A DNA stretch of 64,000 nt, taken from the sequence record LR756511.1; one strand, written 5' to 3'. Below are positions 44,688 to 63,893 of the stretch, one piece after another; positions within the stretch are counted from its first letter, which is position 1; each line of letters begins with the position of its first letter. The position numbers were made by a program, and so were the translations under genes. The notes beneath the pieces are model-generated. The model did not search any database and was not told the origin of the DNA. It worked only from the letters and a program-made list of their open reading frames with translations.

Positions 44688-45203
44688 TCATTTTAAGCAC
44701 TCCTTTAGGTCTTCATCAATGTTGAAGCCTTTGTGACGAAAGATAACTTCATCCTTCTTCTTCTTGTCAACTATATATATCCCGCCACGGTCTAATGGCT
44801 CATAGTTCTCTTTGTTAAATACGCTATAATAAACAGATAATTCGTGACCCTTGTATTTTCCCTGGATTAATCGCAAGTAAGGCAGCACATCTTCCACCAA
44901 AGCCGACCTTAGTTTCTTACGAATGTCCCCATAAACAGGGAAAACAGCCAATCCACGGCTAAAACTCAGGTCATTGTCCCAGGTGTTTATATGCTCATGT
45001 TTATACTCATGATATTCCAATAACGGCAATATGGCGTACCACCAATTAGGACGTTTTGGAAGGTCGATAGATGGAAGCCAATTATTGTAATACAAATCCA
45101 ACATATTAACATCAAGAGTTTTAATCACATCACTGGTTTGTAAAACGTGACTAAAACCCTTGGGCAGTTTTGTTTTCCTGATTCTTTTCTCAAACGGCGT
45201 CAT
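44688..45203 (-). CDS. Hypothetical protein
   Basis: 171-aa ORF coupled to rplL stop. Confidence 0.65.
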   Translation of the reverse strand: MTPFEKRIRKTKLPKGFSHVLQTSDVIKTLDVNMLDLYYNNWLPSIDLPKRPNWWYAILPLLEYHEYKHEHINTWDNDLSFSRGLAVFPVYGDIRKKLRSALVEDVLPYLRLIQGKYKGHELSVYYSVFNKENYEPLDRGGIYIVDKKKKDEVIFRHKGFNIDEDLKECLK

Positions 45204-45595
45204 TTCAAGCTGACCTTTCCGCCCGCTTCTTCTAACTGAGCCTTCAGTTTTTCTGCTTCAGCCTTTGGCAATGCATCCTTGACCTTGGCAGGCGTTCCAG
45301 GCAATGCATTAATCGAAGCCATTGCATCTTTCAAGCTTGCGCCCGTAATCTCACGGTAAGTCTTGATAACGCCGATTCGCTTCGAATCTTCAGTATAACC
45401 GTCCAAAATGACATCAAATTCAGTCTTTTCAGGCGGCTTTTCTTCTTTTTTCTCTTCTTTCTTTACTTGTGGAATGTTCGGCGGCTCAATACCGTAATTC
45501 GTCTTCAAATAGTCCAGTAATTCATTAGCAGCATCGGATTTTAACCCAACGAGTTGCGTTCCGATTTCCACGACTTCTGACGACCATTCTCGCAT
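45200..45595 (-). CDS. rplL: Ribosomal protein bL12 (L7/L12)
   Basis: NTD A.EL.DYL..YGIEP; CTD KTEFDVIL..IGVIKTYREITG.SLKDA..KAEAEKLKAQLEEAGGKVSLK; SD GAGGTG. Confidence 0.93.
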   Translation of the reverse strand: MREWSSEVVEIGTQLVGLKSDAANELLDYLKTNYGIEPPNIPQVKKEEKKEEKPPEKTEFDVILDGYTEDSKRIGVIKTYREITGASLKDAMASINALPGTPAKVKDALPKAEAEKLKAQLEEAGGKVSLK

Positions 45596-45729: not shown

Positions 45730-45948
45730 TTACATCCTGATTGTTTCATCCACTTTCGCCATTCCTCTAATTATTAGGTATGGTTCCATATGGGTGTCGT
45801 TTTTCCGTTTATATTCTTCTTTTGCTCTTTTTAATTCATAGTATGTTTTTTCACTACAAATCCATTGAATATACCGATGGTTTGTAGCGTCCCATACTGT
45901 AAGGCTATACCTTGGGGGCAGCTTTGGCCCCAAGTCTTCGCATTTCAT
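45730..45948 (-). CDS. Small hypothetical protein
   Basis: 72-aa ORF. Confidence 0.55.
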   Translation of the reverse strand: MKCEDLGPKLPPRYSLTVWDATNHRYIQWICSEKTYYELKRAKEEYKRKNDTHMEPYLIIRGMAKVDETIRM

Positions 45949-46487
45949 AGACTGCCCTCTACAAGTTCCTTATACAAGCCATCCACAAAAATTCGAAAAT
46001 TTGGGTCCGTAGCCTGATCGCTTATTATACCTTGTCCCTCATACGGTGTCCAGTCACTATCTTGCATCAACCCAGCTAAGACGCGAACTATCGCCGCACA
46101 TTTTTCATCTTGGCTAAGAATACCTAGATTTCTTTTTGCCCTCAATATTTCCTGCCAAGTAGAACCAGGACTTTCAATCAATACGACACAGGAAAACTTA
46201 GGAGGTTCGGGCAAATTTATCTGAATGGAAGGAATAATTGGTTGAATTACGACACAGGAAAACTTAGGAGGTTCGGGCAAATTTATCTGAATGGAAGGAA
46301 TAATTGGTTGAACTACTGAAATGTCAAAAGAAAGGTTGAAATCACTCTCGCAAGTCATTTCGAACTTTGGTGGTGGCCCAAACTCTATGGGAGGAAAGTC
46401 AGGAACATGCGTGACTAATTTTTCTGGTATAAATGCTTTACTCGGCGTCTCCATTTTCACACTTCCTAATGAACTGCTGTATATCAT
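45945..46487 (-). CDS. Pro-rich hypothetical protein with internal 22-aa duplication
   Basis: VV.QPIIPSIQINLPEPPKFSC twice. Confidence 0.55.
   Translation of the reverse strand: MIYSSSLGSVKMETPSKAFIPEKLVTHVPDFPPIEFGPPPKFEMTCESDFNLSFDISVVQPIIPSIQINLPEPPKFSCVVIQPIIPSIQINLPEPPKFSCVVLIESPGSTWQEILRAKRNLGILSQDEKCAAIVRVLAGLMQDSDWTPYEGQGIISDQATDPNFRIFVDGLYKELVEGSL
46182..46312. repeat. Tandem duplication, 66-bp period
   Basis: TACGACACAGGAAAACTTAGGAGG...GGTTGAA repeated; in-frame within CDS. Confidence 0.9.
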
Positions 46488-46815: not shown

Positions 46816-47064
46816 TCAATTTTTTTCTCGGTTTGTTAGCTCTTTTTCGTAATCGTCAATTTCTTTAACAAGCTTCTGAAGACGAATTTTGTATTGCTCT
46901 GCTTCTTGCATGGTTTTTAGCTCTATACTACAGGAATTTCCATTGTTTCTATGGACAATCTTTAGGCGAACATCATTCCCTGAGCGTGTGTAATGGACTT
47001 CATCGCTCGGTCCATCACAGCCAAGGATTGCCAATGCCGCCACAACGAAAAGTAGTTTTTTCAT
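46816..47064 (-). CDS. Putative lipoprotein
   Basis: MKKLLFVVAALAILGC lipobox. Confidence 0.7.
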   Translation of the reverse strand: MKKLLFVVAALAILGCDGPSDEVHYTRSGNDVRLKIVHRNNGNSCSIELKTMQEAEQYKIRLQKLVKEIDDYEKELTNREKN

Positions 47065-47121: not shown

Positions 47122-49971
47122 ATGGTAAGAGAATTTGTGAGTTGGGTGAAAAAGAAGCGATTGGATGAAGGTATTTGGGGCAACTGGACTTACGAAGTTC
47201 CTATTGACCCAAAACAACAGATGTATGACTTTTACATGCTGGAATATTTACTTCCTCACGGCATTGGTTTGTACTTAACGGTATTTGACTTCGACCCTGA
47301 CGAAAACAAACAAGGTGAAATCGACCCTGAAACGGGAAAGGCACATGGCGAGCCAGCCATGCCCCTCCAACGTAAGTTTAATATGGCTTTATATGAAGTT
47401 GCCAACAAGCTTTTACCAGCTTTAAAGAAAGAGCTTTTAAAAGCTGTTGAGTTTGCGGTTGCCGCAGAACTTAGGCACATCGAAGGCGATTCTCTTGAGA
47501 ATATTCAATATGGCGGCAGTTATAAAGAAAGACTAAAGATGTTAATTCAAACAGTAAAAGAAAAGCGTGGCAAGGCTGACGCTGATTTACTGCGAAGATA
47601 CTTTGTTGCTTACAAGCAATATATGGGCGGCGAAACCAAGGAATTTATGCCGCGTGATCCGCTTGATCCACTTTATGATTATGGTGAAAGCGGCAAAGGC
47701 GGCACACATCAAGAATATCGTAGATCATTTCGTGCTATGAAGGATGCTGGCGGTTCTACAGAGCAATGGATGAGCCTTGCTAGCTGGTTATTTACTAACG
47801 CTGAATGGAATGAAGCATATGGCGGAAAGAATTGGGCACTCATTGCTGACGCATGGGGCCATCTATATCACGCTAAAGCAGCACACGAAATAATTACGTA
47901 TATTGACCATGTTTATGACCTACAACATAACACAGGTAGTGTTTTCACCAAATTACCAAAATTCTCCAAAAACGGTAGCTTTAAATGGATCGAGAAAGCT
48001 TTGGACCATAAGCGGGATATGGTAGCTCCACACGAATTTATTGAGCATTTGTCAAAACCTATGCAGGAATTGGCACTTATTGGCATTAAGTTAAAAACTG
48101 GTAAGACCTTCGGTGACTTTGAAGCAGATTGGCCTGAAATCGTCAAAAAGAAAACAGAAATCCACAATTACAACATGGAAAAGAAGTGGGAAAAAGAGAA
48201 AGAAAAATATTTTTCACAGAAAGCCAGGACGTATTATGAGCAGCAATTACAAGGCTGGGAAGCTGAAAAGAAAAATTATCTGAAAAACAATCCAGGCGGG
48301 GAATTCACTGTTCCTAAGCCAACGCGGTTATCAGCAGAAGACTATCAAAAGAAATTCCCTCATCAAACTTTTTACAATCCAAAACCTAGTCCTATTTCCG
48401 TAGACACGTTTGAAAGAAACGTGGTAACGGACACTGGTAGTCCTTATAGCGTTGCCCGTTTAACAAAACATCATAAGCTGGGACAAGATTCTAGATTTTC
48501 CCACTTGATAGGAAACGGCACACCAGACGTTCCTAAGAAGATTACTGACTATCATCCAGGGGATCAGGTGTCTACACACTGGCCACCTAGAGAGTGGTTA
48601 ACGGTTACGGGTATTCGTCCTGCATCATTCGAAGGCGCAACAGAGTATCTTGACATAGATGGCTTTGCTTTAAGATTAGATAGGGTTAAGGGCTACTTGT
48701 CTAAAGACGCAAAAAATCCCGCACAGATATCGAAACCACCACAGGAACCAGTCTATGACTATCACAACAAACAGATTAATGTTGGTGATCGGGTAAAGCA
48801 ATTTAGCTCATCCACAGATAAAAGTGGCCAAGTTGAAAAGATTGCGAATGGCTGGGTATATGTAAAGTGGGACGATGGCATATCGCAGAAAGCATATATG
48901 CCTTACCTTTTGGTCGTCCTCAAAGATATTAAAGACAAAAACGGAAAAGTAATCAAAGTGGGCGACACCGTAACCTATTCAGGTTATGTTACTGGCGCTA
49001 TTACTAAAATAAGCGATTCTGGCATTGTAACTGTTAAATCTCCATCAGGAATTGCTGGACAATATCAAGCGTCGGATTTAGAAAAGATTGAAAAAGCAAA
49101 AGAGCTTGTTGACAAGCACGGCAAGCCAATTAAAGTTGGCGATCTTGTGAAGTGGTCATATGGTGGTGGTAGAATCCGACAAATAATTGGCAATCAAATT
49201 AAGATTGATTTCCACGGTGATGTTATTACAAAGACGGCAAACGAACTTGAACTCATAACAAGCCCAATGGAAGCCAAAGATTTTAATGGCAAAAACATTA
49301 GCGTAGGCGACAAAGTAATTTTCAGAGCTAATTCTGAATTTGTCGGAAAAGCTACTGAAATTACACCTCTTGGTGAAGTCAAAGTTAAGTGGGACCAAGA
49401 AAATCTTGGCCACACTTTTCTAAATGGTTCCGAATTGATCGTGCAGGTTCCTACACCACAAATGCCAGCGCCTGCACCACAACCATCTTCAACAATGTCC
49501 TCTATCAAGTTGACGTGGGATGATTTGAAGGGTGTTCCAGTTGTTCTACGATTTGTCAGAACTATTAAGGCCATCTACACACATAGTTCCATTGAAAATT
49601 ATGTCAAACAAATATCACAAGCTGTTGGTGTGCCAGTTGAAGAAAAAGACATGGTAGCAATTAAGAAAATGTTTTGGGAAGAAGATACCAAGGAGAAATA
49701 CTATAAACAACGCGGCATGGCTCTCTTCCCACATGACCTTAAGCCGAATGATGCAGTAAAAGTGAAAGCAACAAACTACCCAAGTCCACCGCCCGTGTTC
49801 TTGGATCATTTAACTGGCGATAAAGTGGAAGCCGCTTTACTTGCACATAAGAATGAGGAAGCGGTCAAAATAGTTCAAGATAAAACCAAGTTTGGCACCG
49901 TTGCGGCGAAGGGACTTGTTATATTGTTTAAGTTAGATTTATTTGCAAACGGCATGTACCAAGCAGCATAA
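47122..49971 (+). CDS. 949-aa protein: CTS-like leader, conserved helical NTD, KOW/SH3-like repeats, L12-CTD-like end
   Basis: MVREFVSW; repeats D..(G)K.I.VGD.V (x4); terminal EAVKIVQDKTKFGTVAAKGLV; GATAAATA 5 nt before ATG. Confidence 0.8.
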   Translation: MVREFVSWVKKKRLDEGIWGNWTYEVPIDPKQQMYDFYMLEYLLPHGIGLYLTVFDFDPDENKQGEIDPETGKAHGEPAMPLQRKFNMALYEVANKLLPALKKELLKAVEFAVAAELRHIEGDSLENIQYGGSYKERLKMLIQTVKEKRGKADADLLRRYFVAYKQYMGGETKEFMPRDPLDPLYDYGESGKGGTHQEYRRSFRAMKDAGGSTEQWMSLASWLFTNAEWNEAYGGKNWALIADAWGHLYHAKAAHEIITYIDHVYDLQHNTGSVFTKLPKFSKNGSFKWIEKALDHKRDMVAPHEFIEHLSKPMQELALIGIKLKTGKTFGDFEADWPEIVKKKTEIHNYNMEKKWEKEKEKYFSQKARTYYEQQLQGWEAEKKNYLKNNPGGEFTVPKPTRLSAEDYQKKFPHQTFYNPKPSPISVDTFERNVVTDTGSPYSVARLTKHHKLGQDSRFSHLIGNGTPDVPKKITDYHPGDQVSTHWPPREWLTVTGIRPASFEGATEYLDIDGFALRLDRVKGYLSKDAKNPAQISKPPQEPVYDYHNKQINVGDRVKQFSSSTDKSGQVEKIANGWVYVKWDDGISQKAYMPYLLVVLKDIKDKNGKVIKVGDTVTYSGYVTGAITKISDSGIVTVKSPSGIAGQYQASDLEKIEKAKELVDKHGKPIKVGDLVKWSYGGGRIRQIIGNQIKIDFHGDVITKTANELELITSPMEAKDFNGKNISVGDKVIFRANSEFVGKATEITPLGEVKVKWDQENLGHTFLNGSELIVQVPTPQMPAPAPQPSSTMSSIKLTWDDLKGVPVVLRFVRTIKAIYTHSSIENYVKQISQAVGVPVEEKDMVAIKKMFWEEDTKEKYYKQRGMALFPHDLKPNDAVKVKATNYPSPPPVFLDHLTGDKVEAALLAHKNEEAVKIVQDKTKFGTVAAKGLVILFKLDLFANGMYQAA

Positions 49972-49982
49972 TTGGAGAATAG

Positions 49983-52067
49983 ATGCTAGAAAGCTTTATA
50001 GGCTGGATCAAAAATATAAATGAAGTTTGGGGGTCATCGTGGAAGTATGAAGTTCCAGAGGACAAGGAACAACAGCTTTATGATTTCTACATGATAGAAT
50101 CATTGCTCCCACCTGGAGTAATGTTATACCTAAAGCCATTTGATTTCGGCCACGATAATCCGCCAACTGGCTATTGGGAACATCCTAGAGAAGATCAAGT
50201 ATATTATGCCATCTATGAAGCAGCAGGAAAGCTTATTCCTACCTTAAAGAAAAATTTGCTTGATGCGGTGCTGTTTTCCATCATGTCTGAACTTCGACAC
50301 GTCTTAGATGTTTACGTTGATGACTACAGCGGCAGTCATTATGCTGGGGAAGGCAAGGAAGGAATTAGGGGCTTAGCCAAACGAGTGCGTAAGGAATTCG
50401 ATCCAGAAACAGAAAATATGTTTAAGAATTATATCAAAAATATGGTTCTACATACCAGACCAGAAACAGCTGCTTTCATGCGAAGAAAAAAAGTGCCAGA
50501 AGACCTAAAATCCAGTCACGAATCTAGAAGGGCGTCCTTTCAAGCAATGCTGAAAAGCGGCGGCACTCCTGAAAAATGGGTAGAATTAGCCCGACATTTA
50601 TTCCAACATGAACAGTGGAATGTATCTTTCGGTGGCCCAGCATGGGCCGATATTGCCGAAGGATGGTTAAAGTTATATAAAGCCTCAGCTTTAGGGCATC
50701 AAATTGCGGCTATTGACCGAATTTATGACTTGCAACATAATACTGATACTGTTTTCAACAAGGTTGAAAGCTATCTGAAAGATGGAGGTTACGACTGGCT
50801 TAGAGCCGCCCTAGACCATAAAAGATACATTCAGTCCCCATATGAAATTATTGATAAAGTATCTCCGTGGATGAAAATTCTCGCAAAGAAAGCAATGTGG
50901 GTCATTAAAGGTGTTTCTTGGGCGGAATTTCAGGATAAAAAGGAAGACTATGACAAACAACGTCAAGCTGCCATCCATCAGAAGTATTATGGATCGCCAC
51001 CGAAGGAACCAGAGGTAGAAGAACCAGAAGTACATGACCCTGCGAAAGATTATGTAACACTCAAGTCTCCGTCCCTTTCTTATTATCCGTGGTATGTTAG
51101 CGTGGCCCGAATTGCGTACCGTGTTCCAATGTCTTTTAGTGCATCAGATGAGGAACGAGTTAAGAAAGTTATGCAATATATGGAACTTGATACATCGGAA
51201 ACGAATATAGATAAAGCAGTAGGCCAACTAGAACGGGAAAGACATAATGACCAATACTACGCTGAAAAAGTCAGCATAACAGGACCAGTTGCAGAGTTTA
51301 TAGCCAAGCAAGAGGCAATAAATTTATTAGCACAACACTTCCATGATGCCCCACAAGTTATACTAGACCCATATGATTTTGATGCCGTGATTAACTATTT
51401 GAAACAGGGGACACATAATGGTATAGAAAATGCTAGAATAAAGCTTTCGCAAGCTACTAACTATACACCAACTGCTCTTGATAGTTTAAGATACTATATT
51501 TTCCTAAAAGCAGTCGCAGAAGATAAGTTTGGCGAGGAGTGGGCAAAGCAAGGATATGAAAAACAACAAGCGGCACTAAAAGAAAAATTAACTACCGCTT
51601 GGCTTCCCGTCTCTAGTAGTTCTTTACCAATCGAAACAAAGCTGGCTAGGGTTTTACGTTTGACTAACTACGAATGGAAGAAAATCAAACCAGATGACTT
51701 AATGGCGGCGGTGAAAGTTCTTAATTTACCAATGGGAGTTCTGCAAAAGAAGCAAGCATGGGACATCTTCCAAAAAGAAAGGCAAATGGAAGAATACTTC
51801 GATAAACACTTGGTTACTAGCGTTTATGACGCTACCGATAGGCCAACTGTCTACAAATTATTAGAAACCCACTTCCCTAATGCTCCTCAAATTAAACTCG
51901 ATCCAAAAATCGAAAAAGAACTTGAGGCACTGATATTGAATAAGAATAAAAAGATCAGTGCAATAAAATTATTCAGAGAACAGACAGGGTGGGGTTTAAG
52001 AGCTTCCAAAGACTACGTTGAATACTTACAGCTTGAAATGATCTACTTGGGCGCAAAGGTTGCTTAA
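49983..52067 (+). CDS. 694-aa paralogue: CTS-like leader, same NTD, C-terminal L7/L12-CTD-like domain
   Basis: MLESFIGW; shares QxYDFYM, ELRH, GG..WA.IA, YDLQHNT, ALDHKR; ends KKISAIKLFREQTGWGLRASKDYVE. Confidence 0.8.
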   Translation: MLESFIGWIKNINEVWGSSWKYEVPEDKEQQLYDFYMIESLLPPGVMLYLKPFDFGHDNPPTGYWEHPREDQVYYAIYEAAGKLIPTLKKNLLDAVLFSIMSELRHVLDVYVDDYSGSHYAGEGKEGIRGLAKRVRKEFDPETENMFKNYIKNMVLHTRPETAAFMRRKKVPEDLKSSHESRRASFQAMLKSGGTPEKWVELARHLFQHEQWNVSFGGPAWADIAEGWLKLYKASALGHQIAAIDRIYDLQHNTDTVFNKVESYLKDGGYDWLRAALDHKRYIQSPYEIIDKVSPWMKILAKKAMWVIKGVSWAEFQDKKEDYDKQRQAAIHQKYYGSPPKEPEVEEPEVHDPAKDYVTLKSPSLSYYPWYVSVARIAYRVPMSFSASDEERVKKVMQYMELDTSETNIDKAVGQLERERHNDQYYAEKVSITGPVAEFIAKQEAINLLAQHFHDAPQVILDPYDFDAVINYLKQGTHNGIENARIKLSQATNYTPTALDSLRYYIFLKAVAEDKFGEEWAKQGYEKQQAALKEKLTTAWLPVSSSSLPIETKLARVLRLTNYEWKKIKPDDLMAAVKVLNLPMGVLQKKQAWDIFQKERQMEEYFDKHLVTSVYDATDRPTVYKLLETHFPNAPQIKLDPKIEKELEALILNKNKKISAIKLFREQTGWGLRASKDYVEYLQLEMIYLGAKVA

Positions 52068-52735
52068 AGGAATTGACCCGATCCCATCTGATATGCCATT
52101 AAATAGATTTCGTCCCCATCACCCTGTTCAAAGGCATGTCTTGGCGTCTTTCTGAATGATGGGCTTGGCGTATCCAGCCACGCATCTATAGCTTCTTCTT
52201 TAATCACGGTTGCAAGAGCCTTCTTTACATGGTTAATATCGTAACGTCCCCATGTAAAACCCCACGGCTCCTGTTTGTTACCATTGGAGGCGCCAGTCTT
52301 GTTCAGAAAACGCCATAAGTCTGTATAGTCGCTTTGCTCTATATCTTTGCAATCAGCACAATAACTGTGATAATAGTCATCGTGTTTATTCCAATCAGGA
52401 TGATGGTCGTAAATCAAATCTTCGACGTTGGCTTCTTTACCACAGAATTCACAGGTATCTTTGTAACCAGTGTTAAGCAGTTTCTCGTCAGCTTTTTGAG
52501 TGTATTGACCCCAATGGGACAAGTCGCCGCGATGGTAAACATGAGTGCCATGATGTTCTGTAAAAATGATTATATAGTCTTTAAATTCCTTTATGAATGC
52601 ACTTCGGAAGGTTAATGTCGTTCCTTCTTCATGAAGAACGAATACCAAGCTCGATGGACCAAAATCATATGCGGAGATTTTCATGTCTACCGTGCGGGCA
52701 AGTTCTTCAACTTCTTTGTAGTGCGTTCTAATCAT
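52064..52735 (-). CDS. Hypothetical protein with C-terminal MbcA/ParS/Xre antitoxin-like (DUF2384) motif
   Basis: AIDAWLDTPSPSFRKTPRHAFEQGDGDEI. Confidence 0.55.
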   Translation of the reverse strand: MIRTHYKEVEELARTVDMKISAYDFGPSSLVFVLHEEGTTLTFRSAFIKEFKDYIIIFTEHHGTHVYHRGDLSHWGQYTQKADEKLLNTGYKDTCEFCGKEANVEDLIYDHHPDWNKHDDYYHSYCADCKDIEQSDYTDLWRFLNKTGASNGNKQEPWGFTWGRYDINHVKKALATVIKEEAIDAWLDTPSPSFRKTPRHAFEQGDGDEIYLMAYQMGSGQFL

Positions 52736-53022
52736 TTCGCAACTTTCGTTTGGAGAAACTCAGTTAGAGCATCAAGACGGGCTTGATTTACCTTTATAAT
52801 CTGTTTGTAATTGTCTATTTGACTTTCCATATATCTATAAAGATTACTTATGGCTTCGTTTTTCGTGTCTCCACCGTGAGAGTAATGCCAATCAAGCAAA
52901 TGGATTTGTGCAAGCCATTCATCGTGGAAACTATCGTCTCCGTAATGATTAGTTAGATTTAGTTGACGGTGGACACATACACCATTTGGCAAAGTCCCTT
53001 CATCAAGGTGCCGTTTTTTCAT
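52732..53022 (-). CDS. Hypothetical protein, HicB-like motif
   Basis: SHGGDTKNEAISNL; start re-assigned to ATG 53022. Confidence 0.45.
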   Translation of the reverse strand: MKKRHLDEGTLPNGVCVHRQLNLTNHYGDDSFHDEWLAQIHLLDWHYSHGGDTKNEAISNLYRYMESQIDNYKQIIKVNQARLDALTEFLQTKVAK

Positions 53023-53591
53023 TTTATATTCCTGAACGTAAGGTTGATTCGTGGACCGATTTCCTTCGTTGTTTTGGGCACACAATGCTGCCAGTGATGC
53101 TGCATCGTTCCACCCATCACAAGAAGACTACCGTTCGTGAGAACGTATTCCTTCTTGTCTTTGCTCTTATTGTGTCTGATTTGGAAAACCCGCTCCGCTC
53201 CGATGGACACAGAAGCAATGACGGGGTTCACGCCCAACTCTTTTTCATTGTCGGCGTGCCAACCAATCGAATCTTTACCGTCACGATATTGGTTAAGGAG
53301 AAGACTATTGAATTGATTGCCCGTGATTTCCTCAATCTTAAGTTTGATGCGTTTGAGATAATTAGGCCACTCCAGGGAATCATGAACGACACCCGAATAG
53401 GCATACTTGACGCCTGGATCAGCATAGTATGCGGTAAGACGTGGGAATTTATTGCCATAGAAGGTTACTTCTTGCTTCCACGGCACATGCACGCTCATTG
53501 CATCCAAAAGGCTATCGGCTGTTTCTTTTGGAAGGAAATTGGGATCGTAATATAACGTTCCGCCATCAGTCAACTCGATTAGGTCCGTCAT
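53019..53591 (-). CDS. AlkB-family 2OG-Fe(II) dioxygenase
   Basis: PRLTAYY, NQYRDGKDSIGWHADNE, HWQHCVPK, RINLTFR. Confidence 0.92.
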   Translation of the reverse strand: MTDLIELTDGGTLYYDPNFLPKETADSLLDAMSVHVPWKQEVTFYGNKFPRLTAYYADPGVKYAYSGVVHDSLEWPNYLKRIKLKIEEITGNQFNSLLLNQYRDGKDSIGWHADNEKELGVNPVIASVSIGAERVFQIRHNKSKDKKEYVLTNGSLLVMGGTMQHHWQHCVPKTTKEIGPRINLTFRNIK

Positions 53592-53784
53592 TTTTAAGAT
53601 AAAGCCTTGTTAAACAGGAGTTAATTATCTGGTCTAGTGGATGCGATTGGTGCTTGTTTATAATGTCTTCCAAGCCCATGTTAAAGTGCTTGGAATGGCG
53701 AAGCATTGCCGCAACAATCCGTTCATGAAGCTCATCAGCAGTGAAATCCTTACCATAACCCTGACTGCCTATATACTCGCTCAT
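53566..53784 (-). CDS. Small hypothetical protein
   Basis: ATG overlapping upstream stop. Confidence 0.5.
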   Translation of the reverse strand: MSEYIGSQGYGKDFTADELHERIVAAMLRHSKHFNMGLEDIINKHQSHPLDQIINSCLTRLYLKNDGPNRVD

Positions 53785-54365
53785 ACCCGTACCACCGTTT
53801 CTCGTTCGTAACACGCTTGTAGTGCCGCTTTAACTTCATCATAGTTTGTTCCGTCCCACTTAATGCACCGTGGGTGAGTATAATCTAGGTTTGTTCGATT
53901 AACAGGCATGATTGCTATACCGCGAGGTCGAGCCTTTAACCAATCATCCACATAGTCTGGATAATCGTCATAAAGAAACTTTCCATAAACCATTGACTTT
54001 CTGGAGGTAATGTGGACGTTTACCAGATCGCCAAGATTAGCCTGACTCCACTCTACCTTCTCTTTCCATGCTCGCGGGTATCGCTTTGGACCTTTCGTAA
54101 GAATATGGTTTTCAAAACCAATCTTTTCTGCCAACTTGTAAATCTCCATCCCATCCTGAAGGACTGGCAGATTTCGCCACCAACAAGGTTGCTTCTTAAT
54201 CAAACGAATAAGAGACTTAAACGGCTCCTGCTCGTCAGCTTTCCACATGCCAAGTTCATCAAATCTTTTCAAGTCTAAGGCGGATAGAAGTTTAACTAGG
54301 TCGTTTCGTAATTGTCCTTCGTAGTCCGTAAGGCTCCCATCCAGGTCAAACAGGCCGATATTCAT
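53781..54365 (-). CDS. 5'(3')-deoxyribonucleotidase (HAD, NT5C-like)
   Basis: FDLDGSL, ILTK, EKVEW, KSMVYG.FLYDD. Confidence 0.8.
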   Translation of the reverse strand: MNIGLFDLDGSLTDYEGQLRNDLVKLLSALDLKRFDELGMWKADEQEPFKSLIRLIKKQPCWWRNLPVLQDGMEIYKLAEKIGFENHILTKGPKRYPRAWKEKVEWSQANLGDLVNVHITSRKSMVYGKFLYDDYPDYVDDWLKARPRGIAIMPVNRTNLDYTHPRCIKWDGTNYDEVKAALQACYERETVVRV

Positions 54366-54543
54366 TGTCGCCTCCACTATATTTTTTCATCTTCTTTGTT
54401 TCGCAATTGCCGTAATCAGGCTGGTCGTCCCAATGTGCTTCATCGGGATGTTCCCTTAAACCCTCTTTGAGTTTCTTGCGGGCTTTCTTATTGCCTTCTT
54501 TTTTCAAAGTCCGCTTCAGCTTTCTATATTCTCGCTTGTCCAC
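54346..54543 (-). CDS. Small basic protein
   Basis: 65-aa K/R-rich ORF. Confidence 0.5.
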   Translation of the reverse strand: MDKREYRKLKRTLKKEGNKKARKKLKEGLREHPDEAHWDDQPDYGNCETKKMKKYSGGDNEYRPV

Positions 54544-55680: not shown

Positions 55681-55700
55681 TTTCTTTAATCCTCTGGAAG

Positions 55701-55783
55701 TGGTCAAGGAGGGATTCGAACCCTCACGCCCTTACGGGCACTGGCTCCTAAGGCCAGCGTGTCTGCCGTTCCACCACTTGACC
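55701..55783 (-). tRNA. tRNA-Leu(UAG)
   Basis: GGTCAAG acceptor, CTGGC-CTTAGGA-GCCAG, long variable arm, GGTTCGAATCC; no CCA. Confidence 0.93.
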
Positions 55784-62395: not shown

Positions 62396-62397
62396 AG

Positions 62398-62483
62398 TGA
62401 CCAAGGTGGGATTCGAACCCACACGGAGTAAAAACTCCACCAGGGTTTAAGCCTAGCGCGTCTACCAGTTCCGCCACATGGTC
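62398..62483 (-). tRNA. tRNA-Leu(UAA), intron-less
   Basis: CTAGG-CTTAAAC-CCTGG anticodon arm; one T-T mismatch in acceptor stem; no CCA. Confidence 0.88.
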
Positions 62484-62484
62484 A

Positions 62485-62748
62485 TTAGTAATCATCGTAA
62501 CCACCTTGAGAAGAATAATAATCTTCCCAAGCTTCTCTACGTATCTTATCTATAATCTCCTGTTCCCGTATCTCGTCTAATGACGGATAACCGTTAGCTT
62601 GTCGGTCATCTCCAGCGTTAATTAGTTTTGATAGTTGTAAACTTGGGTCTGTTGCATGGGCATCCCCGTAATAGTATTCGTATTTACATTTAGGGCAATA
62701 ATCTCTTCTTGCACTACTAACCATGTCTGGATGTTCGCAGAAACTCAT
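62485..62748 (-). CDS. Small hypothetical protein
   Basis: C.H...CPKC; stop 1 nt before tRNA. Confidence 0.6.
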   Translation of the reverse strand: MSFCEHPDMVSSARRDYCPKCKYEYYYGDAHATDPSLQLSKLINAGDDRQANGYPSLDEIREQEIIDKIRREAWEDYYSSQGGYDDY

Positions 62749-62767
62749 TTTTTAACCCTCTTAGTAG

Positions 62768-62851
62768 TGGCCGAAGTGGGAGTCGAACCCACACTCCCTT
62801 TCGGGAACCAGATTTTGAGTCTGGCGCGTCTGCCAGTTCCGCCATTCGGCC
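62768..62851 (-). tRNA. tRNA-Leu(CAA)
   Basis: CCAGA-CTCAAAA-TCTGG; GGTTCGACTCC. Confidence 0.95.
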
Positions 62852-62852
62852 T

Positions 62853-63017
62853 TTAATCTATCCACGGACCATTCTTCTCTTTAATTCTATACTTTCTACA
62901 CTTGCGTAAGGTTTTACACCTTTCCATTTCAACCACACATTCTTCAAATGTTCCTTCAAAGAATGTCCATGACCAAGCCTCTTGATCCCATTCGAATAAT
63001 TCATATAATTTCTCCAT
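62853..63017 (-). CDS. Small hypothetical protein between tRNAs
   Basis: MEKLYELFEW..., ATG 2 nt after tRNA, stop 1 nt before next tRNA. Confidence 0.55.
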   Translation of the reverse strand: MEKLYELFEWDQEAWSWTFFEGTFEECVVEMERCKTLRKCRKYRIKEKNGPWID

Positions 63018-63019
63018 AG

Positions 63020-63101
63020 TGACCGAGGTGGGATTCGAACCCACACCCCTTTCGGGACAAGCTTCTGAGGCTTGCGCGTCTACCAGTTCCGCCACTCGGC
63101 C
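63020..63101 (-). tRNA. tRNA-Leu(CAG)
   Basis: CAAGC-CTCAGAA-GCTTG; GGTTCGAATCC. Confidence 0.95.
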
Positions 63102-63103
63102 AG

Positions 63104-63271
63104 TTAGTATTTCAAATCACTTTTGTTTCCACCCTTGTTCAAGCGGTCAATAATTGCGGACGGGAATTCTTTGGTAGGTTTTCCCCACCATTTCCCCATC
63201 TTGCGATCCCATATCTGCCATCCTTTAGGTGGATTCGCTCTGACACAATATCTAGCGTTCTTCTTACCCAT
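63104..63271 (-). CDS. Small basic protein between tRNAs
   Basis: MGKKNARYC..., ATG 2 nt after tRNA, stop 2 nt before next tRNA. Confidence 0.55.
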   Translation of the reverse strand: MGKKNARYCVRANPPKGWQIWDRKMGKWWGKPTKEFPSAIIDRLNKGGNKSDLKY

Positions 63272-63273
63272 AG

Positions 63274-63355
63274 TGACTACGGTGGGAGTCGAACCCACAC
63301 CCCCGAAGGGACAAGTTTCTAAAACTTGCGCGTATACCGATTCCGCCACGCAGCC
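63274..63355 (-). tRNA. tRNA-Leu(UAG)
   Basis: CAAGT-TTTAGAA-ACTTG; GGTTCGACTCC. Confidence 0.9.
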
Positions 63356-63357
63356 AT

Positions 63358-63507
63358 TTACTTCATCATCTTGCGTATCTTTTCGCTTACACAATACGTT
63401 ACCAATAAAGCGGGCACTACAATCATCCAAAAATAAGTAAGCTTAACCTTCTCCCAAAAACTAGCTCTTTCCCAAATCCTATTGTGATATTCAATACTTG
63501 TATTCAT
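63358..63507 (-). CDS. Small membrane protein (not in ORF track)
   Basis: MNTSIEYHNRIWERASFWEKVKLTYFWMIVVPALLVTYCV...; ATG overlaps upstream stop; stop 2 nt before tRNA. Confidence 0.5.
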   Translation of the reverse strand: MNTSIEYHNRIWERASFWEKVKLTYFWMIVVPALLVTYCVSEKIRKMMK

Positions 63508-63806
63508 TTTATTTGCTCGTAATTCAATTGAACAGGCTTGTCGTCGTATACTGTTATTTGGAAATTCTTATCCATAAACAAAATGTGATAAGGGATTTCT
63601 AGGAGTTTTAGATGTTCCTCTGTGATAGCTCTGAACTCTTCTCTACGACTCGTCCATATTATAATATGGACGCCAGTTTCATATTGTTTTCTTAACTCAT
63701 TGACTATTTCACTTTTGACTTTTAGAACAAATATACCTTTATCGGGGTCTGTTCCGTCTTCCACTAAAGTTCCGTCAATATCATAGATTCTAGTATGGTG
63801 TTTCAT
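63504..63806 (-). CDS. HAD-like phosphatase (capsule/PNK-type)
   Basis: YDIDGTL, IWTSR, YH.LFMDK, YDDK. Confidence 0.7.
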   Translation of the reverse strand: MKHHTRIYDIDGTLVEDGTDPDKGIFVLKVKSEIVNELRKQYETGVHIIIWTSRREEFRAITEEHLKLLEIPYHILFMDKNFQITVYDDKPVQLNYEQIK

Positions 63807-63810
63807 TTAG

Positions 63811-63893
63811 TGCGTATGGTAGGAATCGAACCTACAAAGCCCGAAGGCGACAGATTTACAGTCTGTGGGACTCACCACCTGTCCAACATACGC
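63811..63893 (-). tRNA. tRNA-Tyr(GUA)
   Basis: GCGTATG/CATACGC acceptor, ACAGA-CTGTAAA-TCTGT, long variable arm; no CCA. Confidence 0.9.

What the first reader, a model, noticed from the sequence alone, without database searches (positions are those of the whole stretch)
47122..52067. Two giant paralogous cargo proteins ending in ribosomal L7/L12-CTD-like domains, one with KOW-like repeats
Seen: the 949-aa and 694-aa ORFs share a ~300-aa N-terminal domain (QxYDFYM, ELRH, (Y/F)GG..WA.IA, ID..YDLQHNT..VF.K, ALDHKR) that I cannot assign. The 694-aa protein ends in KKISAIKLFREQTGWGLRASKDYVE, a close match to the bL12 CTD factor-binding helix pair. The 949-aa protein has four D..(G)K.I.VGD.V barrel repeats and a degenerate version of the same C-terminal motif. 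Established: the bL12 CTD recruits translational GTPases; KOW domains bind RNA/ribosome/RNAP. Inference: these are injected modular effectors that carry an unknown catalytic or binding domain to the host translation apparatus.
Basis: partly seen in the sequence, partly recalled or inferred. Interest (0 to 1): 0.7.

Follow-up and report, generated by a model that had tools for sequence, protein, structure and literature searches.

The report
Huge-phage modular proteins with bL12-like hairpin
Two neighbouring genes of a 595-kb uncultured phage belong to a large unstudied phage protein family that joins a constant all-helical N-terminal domain of unknown function to variable tails; here the tails end in a helical hairpin resembling the part of ribosomal protein bL12 that binds translation factors, but they are not bL12 domains and nothing shows they are injected.

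Summary
ORFs 47122-49971 (949 aa) and 49983-52067 (694 aa) share a ~335-aa N-terminal domain (37% identity, E=7e-63). The 949-aa protein has four ~58-aa barrel-like repeats. Both proteins end in a related C-terminal segment.

- **N-terminal domain:** a large metagenomic phage family (1285 clusters), confidently all-alpha (pLDDT 88), with no PDB match by fold or sequence. It often forms tandem arrays of 2-6 paralogues with variable tails (ankyrin, PDZ, KOW/SH3, beta-solenoid).
- **C-terminus:** the "L12 CTD" is the last hairpin of a repeated ~145-aa all-helical module, present once in the 949-aa protein and twice in the 694-aa protein. The hairpin is bL12-like at profile level: hhalign 92% over 25 columns, and a hairpin HMM finds 110 of 120 true bL12s. 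The module has no beta-sheet and scores below Pfam's threshold, so it is not a bL12 CTD.
- **Context:** a full-length bL12 gene lies 1.5 kb upstream, and this synteny recurs in only one close relative.

Best reading (about 0.35): intracellular modular phage proteins whose hairpin docks on translational GTPases and brings the unknown N-terminal domain to them. Injection is unsupported. bL12-like segments inside larger phage proteins were already reported (Mizuno 2019).

The parts
47122..49971 (+). Gene A, 949-aa modular protein (whole ORF with stop)
   Evidence: ORF list; identical in LR756511.1
47122..48132 (+). Gene A N-terminal domain (aa 1-337), conserved all-alpha family domain of unknown function
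   Evidence: Paralogy E=7e-63; profile search with 1285 clusters; phrog_20946 E=2.2e-9
48133..48756 (+). Gene A lineage-specific middle region (aa 338-545), no recognised domain
   Evidence: Conserved only in close relatives; no Pfam hit
48757..49470 (+). Gene A four tandem ~58-aa KOW/SH3-like barrel repeats (aa 546-783)
   Evidence: Regex and pairwise BLAST E 7e-7 to 2e-3; KOW4_SPT5 29.2 bits above the cut-off of 27, in repeat 1; the other repeats sub-threshold
49534..49959 (+). Gene A C-terminal ~145-aa all-alpha module (aa 805-946), one copy, with a degenerate bL12-like hairpin at about 49852-49926
   Evidence: Family module HMM E=1.3e-26; aligned in A3
49983..52067 (+). Gene B, 694-aa modular protein (whole ORF with stop)
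   Evidence: ORF list
49983..50975 (+). Gene B N-terminal domain (aa 1-331)
   Evidence: AlphaFold2 model pLDDT 88.3, pTM 0.87, 15 helices; no PDB fold or sequence match
51084..51530 (+). Gene B module copy 1 (aa 368-516), hairpin degenerate
   Evidence: Module HMM E=3.7e-24; internal BLAST against copy 2 E=6e-5
51624..52058 (+). Gene B module copy 2 (aa 548-692)
   Evidence: Module HMM E=6.1e-36; AlphaFold2 model pLDDT 91.5, seven helices, no strands
51948..52022 (+). bL12 alpha4-alpha5-like helical hairpin (aa 656-680) at the end of module copy 2
   Evidence: hhalign against bL12 profile 92%, E=6e-7, 25 columns; Pfam L12 positions 10-36 of 67, sub-threshold; hairpin HMM hits 110 of 120 bL12; column shares
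45200..45595 (-). Neighbouring full-length phage bL12 homologue (131 aa); context only, not part of the two genes
   Evidence: Pfam Ribosomal_L12 E=5.7e-19, full CTD; 45-48% identity over 98-100% of cellular bL12; same synteny in L001

Best explanation
The two genes are tandem paralogues of a large, uncharacterised family of modular, probably intracellular (non-virion) proteins of large and huge phages.

Each member joins a constant ~330-aa all-alpha N-terminal domain to a variable C-terminal adaptor region. The N-terminal domain carries an invariant polar signature (E103, R105, H106, D245, H252, N253, K260 in the 694-aa protein). I take it to be the working part, either an enzyme or a ligand-binding domain.

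In this phage the adaptor region is made of KOW/SH3-like beta-barrels (949-aa protein) and one or two copies of a ~145-aa helical module. The final hairpin of that module reproduces the conserved Lys/Arg-bearing helix pair (alpha4-alpha5) of the bL12 C-terminal domain.

Proposed mechanism (inferred, not shown): the hairpin docks on the G domains of translational GTPases (EF-Tu, EF-G, IF2, RF3), or on another partner of the bL12 CTD. It would either tether the N-terminal domain to these factors or compete with the ribosomal stalk. The barrels would add RNA or ribosome contacts.

Shown: paralogy, family size, domain anatomy, predicted folds, profile-level bL12 likeness of the hairpin.

Inferred: exposure of the basic face of the hairpin, factor binding, and any catalysis by the N-terminal domain.
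For: - Paralogy. The family has 1285 clusters, and the domain is N-terminal in 182 of 195 members sampled.
- Invariant polar residues across 114 members, partly kept in distant stand-alone homologues.
- Confident all-alpha models.
- The hairpin-bL12 relation is reproducible across four tests.
- The bL12 positions that are near-invariant (I, K, R, T, G, L) are also among the most conserved in the modules, with shares of 0.44-0.78 for the same residue. The module's most conserved hairpin position is a Lys (0.83) at the bL12 helix-5 column that one search lists as near-invariant Lys, where the window's own bL12 copy has Met.
- bL12 helices 4 and 5 form the conserved, positively charged site that binds IF2, EF-Tu, EF-G and RF3 (PMC6753160).
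- Partner domains in the family are intracellular binding modules: ankyrin, PDZ, KOW, SH3.
- The genomic setting is non-structural and translation-flavoured, with a bL12 gene, six tRNA genes and an AlkB-like oxygenase.
- bL12-like segments inside larger phage proteins are precedented, and one such protein was found in ribosome fractions (PMC6375957).
Against: - The likeness covers only 25 columns. It could be convergence, or a common helical-hairpin packing motif.
- The module as a whole has no bL12 fold.
- The hairpin is degenerate in the 949-aa protein and in copy 1 of the 694-aa protein.
- Only 37-42 of 195 family members carry the hairpin or module, so translation targeting cannot be the family's general role.
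- A bL12 gene lies nearby only in the window and in one close relative, out of 48 loci examined.
- There is no evidence on binding, expression or localisation.
- The N-terminal domain matches no known enzyme.
Confidence: 0.35

Rival explanations
1. Generic diversifying adaptor proteins. The constant N-terminal domain acts on, or senses, something unrelated to translation, for example a host defence or takeover target. The variable tails supply binding specificity. The bL12-like hairpin is only a structural helix-turn-helix that converged on, or was long ago borrowed from, bL12, and it does not bind translation factors.
For: - Tandem arrays of 2-6 paralogues with divergent tails (L012, L017, L025, L037) are typical of arms-race families.
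- The partner domains are heterogeneous: ankyrin, PDZ, beta-solenoid, GNAT, DUF5662.
- Most members lack the hairpin.
- The module is a compact seven-helix bundle in which the hairpin's hydrophobic positions are the best conserved class.
Against: - Basic and polar bL12 signature positions (K, R, T, K) are conserved in the modules, not only the hydrophobic ones.
- The hairpin HMM recognises 110 of 120 bL12 proteins.
- No PADLOC match.
Confidence: 0.3
2. The N-terminal domain belongs to a nucleotide or nucleic-acid modification pathway. The fused tails merely localise it.
For: Distant stand-alone ~340-aa homologues occur in cultured phages: Vibrio SIO-2-like siphoviruses and Rhodobacter RcZahn (family HMM E=4.7e-14 and 1.2e-9 at Z=1e6). 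They sit in a conserved cluster with a PPDK-like kinase (PPDK_N plus the PEP-utilisers mobile domain) and DSP-type phosphatases, close to the DNA polymerase gene.
Against: - That cluster is absent around the window genes and the other fused members.
- Only the core of the domain (aa ~205-280) is shared with the stand-alone proteins.
- No Pfam match to any known DNA-modification enzyme.
Confidence: 0.12
3. One reading: virion-packaged proteins injected with the DNA. The constant N-terminal domain would serve as the packaging or ejection part, or as a warhead, delivered at the start of infection.
For: A constant N-terminus with variable C-termini, and some very large family members (stop-to-stop ORFs of up to about 4156 aa), recall polyvalent or ejected phage proteins. 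One weak structural neighbour in BFVD is unnamed.
Against: - No virion genes nearby in the window or in five related loci.
- No virion-associated Pfam family matched any member examined.
- Invariant polar residues fit a pocket better than a packaging signal.
Confidence: 0.1
4. Structural fibres or receptor-binding proteins, with a conserved N-terminal anchor and variable distal tips.
For: The tandem-array, constant-N, variable-C pattern. Beta-solenoid repeats in a few members.
Against: - The N-terminal domain is a 330-aa globular helical domain with polar invariants.
- The tails here are helical bundles and small barrels, and ankyrin, PDZ and GNAT partners are intracellular in type.
- No tail genes nearby.
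Confidence: 0.03

Closest known systems
Ribosomal protein bL12 C-terminal domain (Pfam PF00542), helices 4 and 5
   Same: A 25-residue helix-turn-helix with the same pattern of conserved I, K, R, T, G and L positions. In bL12 this is the conserved basic surface that binds IF2, EF-Tu, EF-G and RF3 (PMC6753160).
   Different: Only the hairpin is shared. The phage module is a ~145-aa seven-helix bundle without the beta-sheet. It scores below the Pfam gathering score. It has no bL12 N-terminal dimerisation domain or hinge, and no bL12 appears in the Foldseek results.
bL12-like domains embedded in larger phage proteins (Mizuno et al. 2019, PMC6375957; e.g. the 724-aa Erwinia phage Ea9-2 protein and the 418-aa Salmonella phage FSL SP-058/076 proteins)
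   Same: A short bL12-like segment covering a small fraction of a much larger phage polypeptide. The suggested role is an interface with translation factors.
   Different: The flanking sequences are unrelated: tblastn of the module against 50,697 phage records found only hairpin-length, non-significant matches (E 0.1-3) to roseophage 'ribosomal protein' genes and others. Here the segment is part of a repeated helical module fused to a different, very large family domain, in huge phages.
phrog_20946 and stand-alone ~340-aa hypothetical proteins of Vibrio SIO-2-like siphoviruses and Rhodobacter phage RcZahn
   Same: They share the core of the N-terminal domain: W..YGG.AW..IA, D......HN......K.
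   Different: They are stand-alone, with no C-terminal modules. They sit next to a PPDK-like kinase and DSP phosphatases. The first ~100 residues and the E-x-R-H motif are not alignable. Function is unknown there too.
KOW / SH3-like barrels of Spt5/NusG type (PF23291, PF00467)
   Same: Small repeated ~58-aa units starting with the G-K-x-I-x-V-G-D-x-V pattern. There is a Pfam KOW4_SPT5 hit, and KOW hits in relatives.
   Different: Only one of the four repeats scores convincingly. There is no NGN domain. The barrel fold was not modelled here.
EF-Ts N-terminal domain motif, said to resemble bL12 helices 4-5 (Wieden et al. 2001; recalled from my own knowledge, not retrieved)
   Same: A precedent that this hairpin can be reused outside bL12 as an EF-Tu-binding element.
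   Different: No EF_TS or UBA family appeared in Pfam scans of 36 modules at E<=0.1, nor in the Foldseek results.

Membership tests
bL12 C-terminal domain (PF00542) | Match to the whole CTD profile at or above the curated score | tested here: not met
   17.1-19.5 bits against a cut-off of 25.9, covering only profile positions 10-36 of 67. Ten of 36 modules hit, all sub-threshold. TIGR00855 E=0.027.
bL12 C-terminal domain (PF00542) | Alpha/beta fold with a three-stranded sheet packed against the helices | tested here: not met
   The AlphaFold2 model (pLDDT 91.5) has seven helices and no strands. No bL12 among the top 50 Foldseek PDB matches. Only about 13 residues follow the hairpin.
bL12 C-terminal domain (PF00542) | Conserved helix 4 - helix 5 hairpin with basic factor-binding positions | tested here: met
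   hhalign 92%, E=6e-7. PDB profile search gives bL12 as 11 of the top 12 hits. The hairpin HMM hits 110 of 120 bL12. Column shares.
bL12 (whole protein) | N-terminal dimerisation/bL10-binding domain and flexible hinge | tested here: not met
   No Ribosomal_L12_N hit in either protein. The neighbouring 131-aa gene, by contrast, aligns end to end with cellular bL12.
bL12 (function) | Binding of translational GTPases | not testable with these tools
   No binding or complex-prediction tool was available.
KOW domain (PF00467 / PF23291) | Profile match above the curated score | tested here: inconclusive
   Whole protein 29.2 bits against 27, due to repeat 1. Taken alone, repeat 1 gives E=2.5e-4 (21.3 bits) and repeats 2-4 give E>=0.026 for other families. 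Relatives carry precomputed KOW hits.
KOW domain | Five-stranded SH3-like barrel fold | not tested
Phage proteins with embedded bL12 domain (Mizuno 2019) | bL12-like segment inside a larger phage polypeptide | tested here: met
   description in PMC6375957.
Phage proteins with embedded bL12 domain (Mizuno 2019) | Homology of the flanking regions to those proteins | tested here: not met
   tblastn of the 155-aa module found only hairpin-length, non-significant matches in cultured phages.
phrog_20946 / N-terminal-domain family | Significant profile match to the conserved core | tested here: met
   E=2.2e-9 and 2.8e-8. 1285 clusters found by the profile. Family HMM against cultured-phage members E=4.7e-14 and 1.2e-9.
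Virion-packaged polyvalent / ejected proteins | Known virion or polyvalent-protein domains, or a location in the structural gene module | tested here: not met
   No such Pfam domains in these two proteins, in the 79 relatives scanned as alignment A4, or in the 15 large relatives and giant ORFs scanned. Neighbours are non-structural.
Known anti-phage defence or counter-defence proteins (PADLOC) | Match to any PADLOC model | tested here: not met
   No hit at E<=0.1.

The most novel reading that the evidence does not exclude
The ~145-aa helical module is a dedicated decoy or adaptor for translational GTPases, built around a grafted bL12 alpha4-alpha5 hairpin. The conserved N-terminal domain would be a new-fold enzyme that modifies the captured factor or the ribosome. 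Together they would make a new class of phage translation-takeover proteins, and their tandem amplification and tail swapping would re-aim one catalytic head at different host targets.
Probability: 0.2. Interest if true: 0.8.

Novelty: new variant of a known kind. Interest (0 to 1): 0.5.

Why it matters
Huge phages are thought to redirect host translation (PMC7162821), yet few concrete protein mechanisms are known beyond encoded tRNAs, bS21 and bL12.

If the hairpin module really docks on translational GTPases, these proteins would be a testable example of molecular mimicry of the ribosomal stalk by a phage.

Whatever the hairpin does, the N-terminal domain is a sizeable piece of phage 'dark matter':
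- at least 1285 clusters at 50% identity;
- a confident predicted fold with no solved relative;
- invariant polar residues;
- tandem amplification with swapped tails.

Solving one structure would annotate many metagenomic proteins at once.

Tried and rejected
- **Known domains for the N-terminal domain.** Pfam, NCBIfam and PADLOC scans of both proteins found none.
- **PDB sequence searches.** The single proteins and the 79-sequence profile gave only low-complexity artefacts: huntingtin polyQ and a designed repeat protein.
- **Foldseek on the N-terminal domain.** Against PDB the best match was E=0.49 with TM 0.15. Against BFVD there was one unnamed viral protein at TM 0.50.
- **Foldseek on the module against PDB.** Nothing significant; NusB-like bundles at E~0.8.
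- **Ferritin-like di-metal site.** I considered one from E103-x-x-H106 and D249-x-x-H252.
- **Protein search restricted to the module (aa 540-694).** It returned only the query itself.
- **The search for related loci.** It could not use the module alignment, and with the two-sequence alignment it found one locus. The 79-sequence alignment worked.
- **Promoter and terminator scans.** No more sites than the shuffled controls gave.
- **Tandem-repeat finder on the DNA.** Nothing relevant.
- **Large relatives.** Pfam gave nothing for four of the five proteins and for most of the giant ORFs. Several of them are simply two or three family units in one ORF.
- **Literature.** I looked for virion proteomics of the cultured-phage homologues and found none usable. 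The jumbo-phage comparative paper does not mention this family.
Full report
**Source and genes.** The window is identical to positions 372001-436000 of LR756511.1, an unannotated 595,163-bp 'uncultured phage' record. It is of the kind described by Al-Shayeb et al. 2020 (PMC7162821). They lie between minus-strand genes, diverging from 46816-47064 and converging on 52064-52735.

**Check of the observation.** BLASTP of the two proteins aligns residues 1-334 with 1-317 at 37% identity, E=7e-63. The last ~100 residues align at E=3e-4. The four repeats lie at aa 546-783 of the 949-aa protein, with pairwise E-values from 7e-7 to 2e-3. Pfam gives KOW4_SPT5 (E=8.8e-7, 29.2 bits, cut-off 27) on the first repeat. 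The other repeats are sub-threshold when scanned alone. The C-terminal motif of the 694-aa protein matches Pfam Ribosomal_L12 only weakly (E=0.007, 17 bits, cut-off 25.9) and only over model positions 10-36 of 67.

**The N-terminal domain.**
- *Family size.* A profile of the two N-terminal domains, searched against 1.84 billion cluster representatives, found 1285 proteins at E<=1e-3 and 293 at E<=1e-30. A word-indexed search returned 87 relatives, all metagenomic. Some sit on contigs of up to 213 kb. Almost none is named; one JGI entry is auto-named 'ribosomal protein L7/L12'.
- *Position.* The domain starts within the first 60 residues in 182 of 195 members sampled.
- *Conserved residues.* In 114 members the invariant or near-invariant residues (694-aa numbering) include E103, R105, H106, W212, G217, G218, W221, D245, Y248, D249, Q251, H252, N253, K260, W272, L277 and K280.
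- *Predicted fold.* AlphaFold2 with a 79-sequence alignment gives a confident all-alpha model: pLDDT 88.3, pTM 0.87, 15 helices.
- *No solved relative.* Foldseek finds nothing in the PDB (best E=0.49, TM 0.15). In BFVD there is one unnamed viral protein (probability 1.0, TM 0.50). Sequence-profile searches of the PDB give only artefacts. NCBIfam and PADLOC give nothing for this domain. PHROGs places the core in phrog_20946, function unknown.

**Distant stand-alone homologues.** Proteins of ~340 aa exist in cultured phages: Vibrio SIO-2-like siphoviruses and Rhodobacter phage RcZahn. The family HMM scores them at E=4.7e-14 and 1.2e-9 with Z=1e6. There the gene sits between a PPDK-like kinase, DSP-type phosphatases and the DNA polymerase. 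These proteins keep W212, G217-G218, W221, D245, H252, N253 and K260, but not D249 or the E-x-R-H stretch.

**Family behaviour.** I examined the window and 48 fetched loci: five metagenomic or genomic contigs, three cultured phages and 40 IMG/VR viral contigs, the largest 572 kb.
- The domain often occurs in tandem arrays: two copies (window, L001, L012), three (L037), five (L025, L028-L030) and six (L017).
- It also occurs inside very long stop-to-stop ORFs of up to 4156 aa.
- Some long database proteins are simply two or three family units in a row.
- Recognisable partner domains are ankyrin repeats, PDZ, KOW, SH3_15, YdcK-type beta-solenoid, GNAT, DUF5662 and DUF4116. Most tails have no Pfam match.

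The family therefore has a constant head and swapped tails.

**The C-terminal part.**
- *A repeated module.* An HMM iterated from the last 150 residues of the 694-aa protein defines a ~143-aa module. It occurs once in the 949-aa protein (aa 805-946, E=1.3e-26) and twice in the 694-aa protein (aa 368-516, E=3.7e-24; aa 548-692, E=6.1e-36). The two copies in the 694-aa protein also match by BLAST (E=6e-5).
- *Distribution.* The module is present in 42 of 195 family members, in one to three copies, and it usually ends within 25 residues of the C-terminus.
- *Predicted fold.* AlphaFold2 on a 36-module alignment gives pLDDT 91.5, pTM 0.85, with seven helices and no strand. Foldseek against the PDB finds nothing significant and no bL12 in the top 50. 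The C-termini are therefore not bL12 C-terminal domains.

**The hairpin.** The last two helices of the module are nevertheless bL12-like well beyond chance.
- The module profile's best PDB sequence hits are bL12: 11 of the top 12, best E=0.0012, always over the same ~35 residues.
- Ten of 36 modules give sub-threshold Pfam L12 hits, and no other family recurs.
- hhalign of the module profile against a profile of 36 true bL12 proteins gives 92% probability, E=6e-7, over 25 columns.
- A 39-column HMM built only from the phage modules detects 110 of 120 true bL12 proteins at E<=1e-3. A reversed-sequence control of the family gives no hits.
- Column by column, the bL12 positions that are nearly invariant (I, K, R, T, G, L) are also among the most conserved in the modules. 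The module's helix-5 Lys is kept in 83% of modules.

In bL12, helices 4 and 5 form the conserved, positively charged site that binds IF2, EF-Tu, EF-G and RF3 (PMC6753160).

**Context.**
- A genuine full-length bL12 homologue (131 aa, 45200-45595, minus strand) lies 1.5 kb upstream. Pfam gives E=5.7e-19, and it is 45-48% identical to cellular bL12 over its whole length.
- The same order recurs in a related 24-kb contig, L001: bL12, small genes, the tandem pair, and a 2OG-Fe(II) oxygenase a few genes further on. A bL12 gene is not nearby in any of the other loci.
- Other neighbours are an AlkB-like oxygenase, an NT5C nucleotidase, six tRNA genes and many small unknown ORFs.
- No virion genes were seen near the family in the window or in L001-L005.

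**Interpretation.** Most likely these are intracellular modular phage proteins with a constant working head and exchangeable adaptor tails. In this lineage the tails carry a bL12-type hairpin, and in the 949-aa protein also KOW/SH3-like barrels. Together these would direct the head to translational GTPases or the ribosome, or would compete with the stalk.

I put about 0.35 on this mechanism. Factor binding, exposure of the basic face and catalysis are all inferred. The main rival, at about 0.3, is that the hairpin is only a structural element and the family serves other targets. A link to nucleotide or nucleic-acid modification (about 0.12), virion cargo (about 0.1) and structural fibres (about 0.03) are less likely.

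**Comparison with what is known.** Mizuno et al. 2019 (PMC6375957) already reported bL12-like domains placed inside larger phage proteins of up to 724 aa. They suggested that such domains provide interfaces for translation factors, and they found one such protein in ribosome fractions.

The present case differs in four ways:
- only the hairpin is kept;
- it is built into a repeated all-helical module;
- it is fused to a very large, unrelated family domain;
- the flanks show no similarity to the earlier examples.

I therefore rate it a new variant of a known kind, with moderate interest. The uncharacterised N-terminal domain family is arguably the more valuable lead.

Noticed in passing
window 45200-45595 (-): A full-length phage-encoded bL12 homologue (131 aa). 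Its helix 5 departs from the bL12 norm: it has Met at the column that one search lists as near-invariant Lys (only 6% of the aligned bL12s share its residue), whereas the modules of the two large proteins keep Lys at the aligned position in 83% of copies.
   Followed up: partly
window 55700-55783 and 62397-63893 (-): Six tRNA genes: five tRNA-Leu covering four anticodons (tag twice, taa, caa, cag) and one tRNA-Tyr.
   Followed up: no
window 53019-53591 (-) and 53781-54377 (-): An AlkB-like 2OG-Fe(II) oxygenase (E=3.3e-37) and an NT5C-type 5'-nucleotidase (E=8.4e-9), a few genes downstream of the pair. The oxygenase keeps its place in the related contig L001.
   Followed up: partly
window 45945-46487 (-): The 180-aa ORF contains an exact internal duplication of about 20 residues (QPIIPSIQINLPEPPKFSCV, twice), visible in the translation.
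   Followed up: no
L006 2298-6549, L007 2109-7353, L008 1546-6463: In cultured Vibrio (SIO-2-like) and Rhodobacter (RcZahn) phages, the stand-alone homologue of the N-terminal domain sits in a conserved cluster with a PPDK-like kinase and one or two DSP-type phosphatases, close to the DNA polymerase and portal genes. This is an unexplained and possibly functional gene set.
   Followed up: partly
L017 8535-16439; L025 3251-11374; L027 1313-13780: Six and five tandem paralogues of the family in single viral contigs. Separately, a 4156-aa stop-to-stop ORF carries the domain together with GNAT and beta-solenoid segments. Some long 'proteins' may be adjacent genes merged by gene calling or by a different genetic code.
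   Followed up: partly
window 49983-52067, aa 638-683: NCBIfam PRK06771, a 97-aa bacterial 'hypothetical protein' model, matches the hairpin region better (E=1.7e-5) than the bL12 model does. The hairpin may therefore also exist in small cellular proteins.
   Followed up: no
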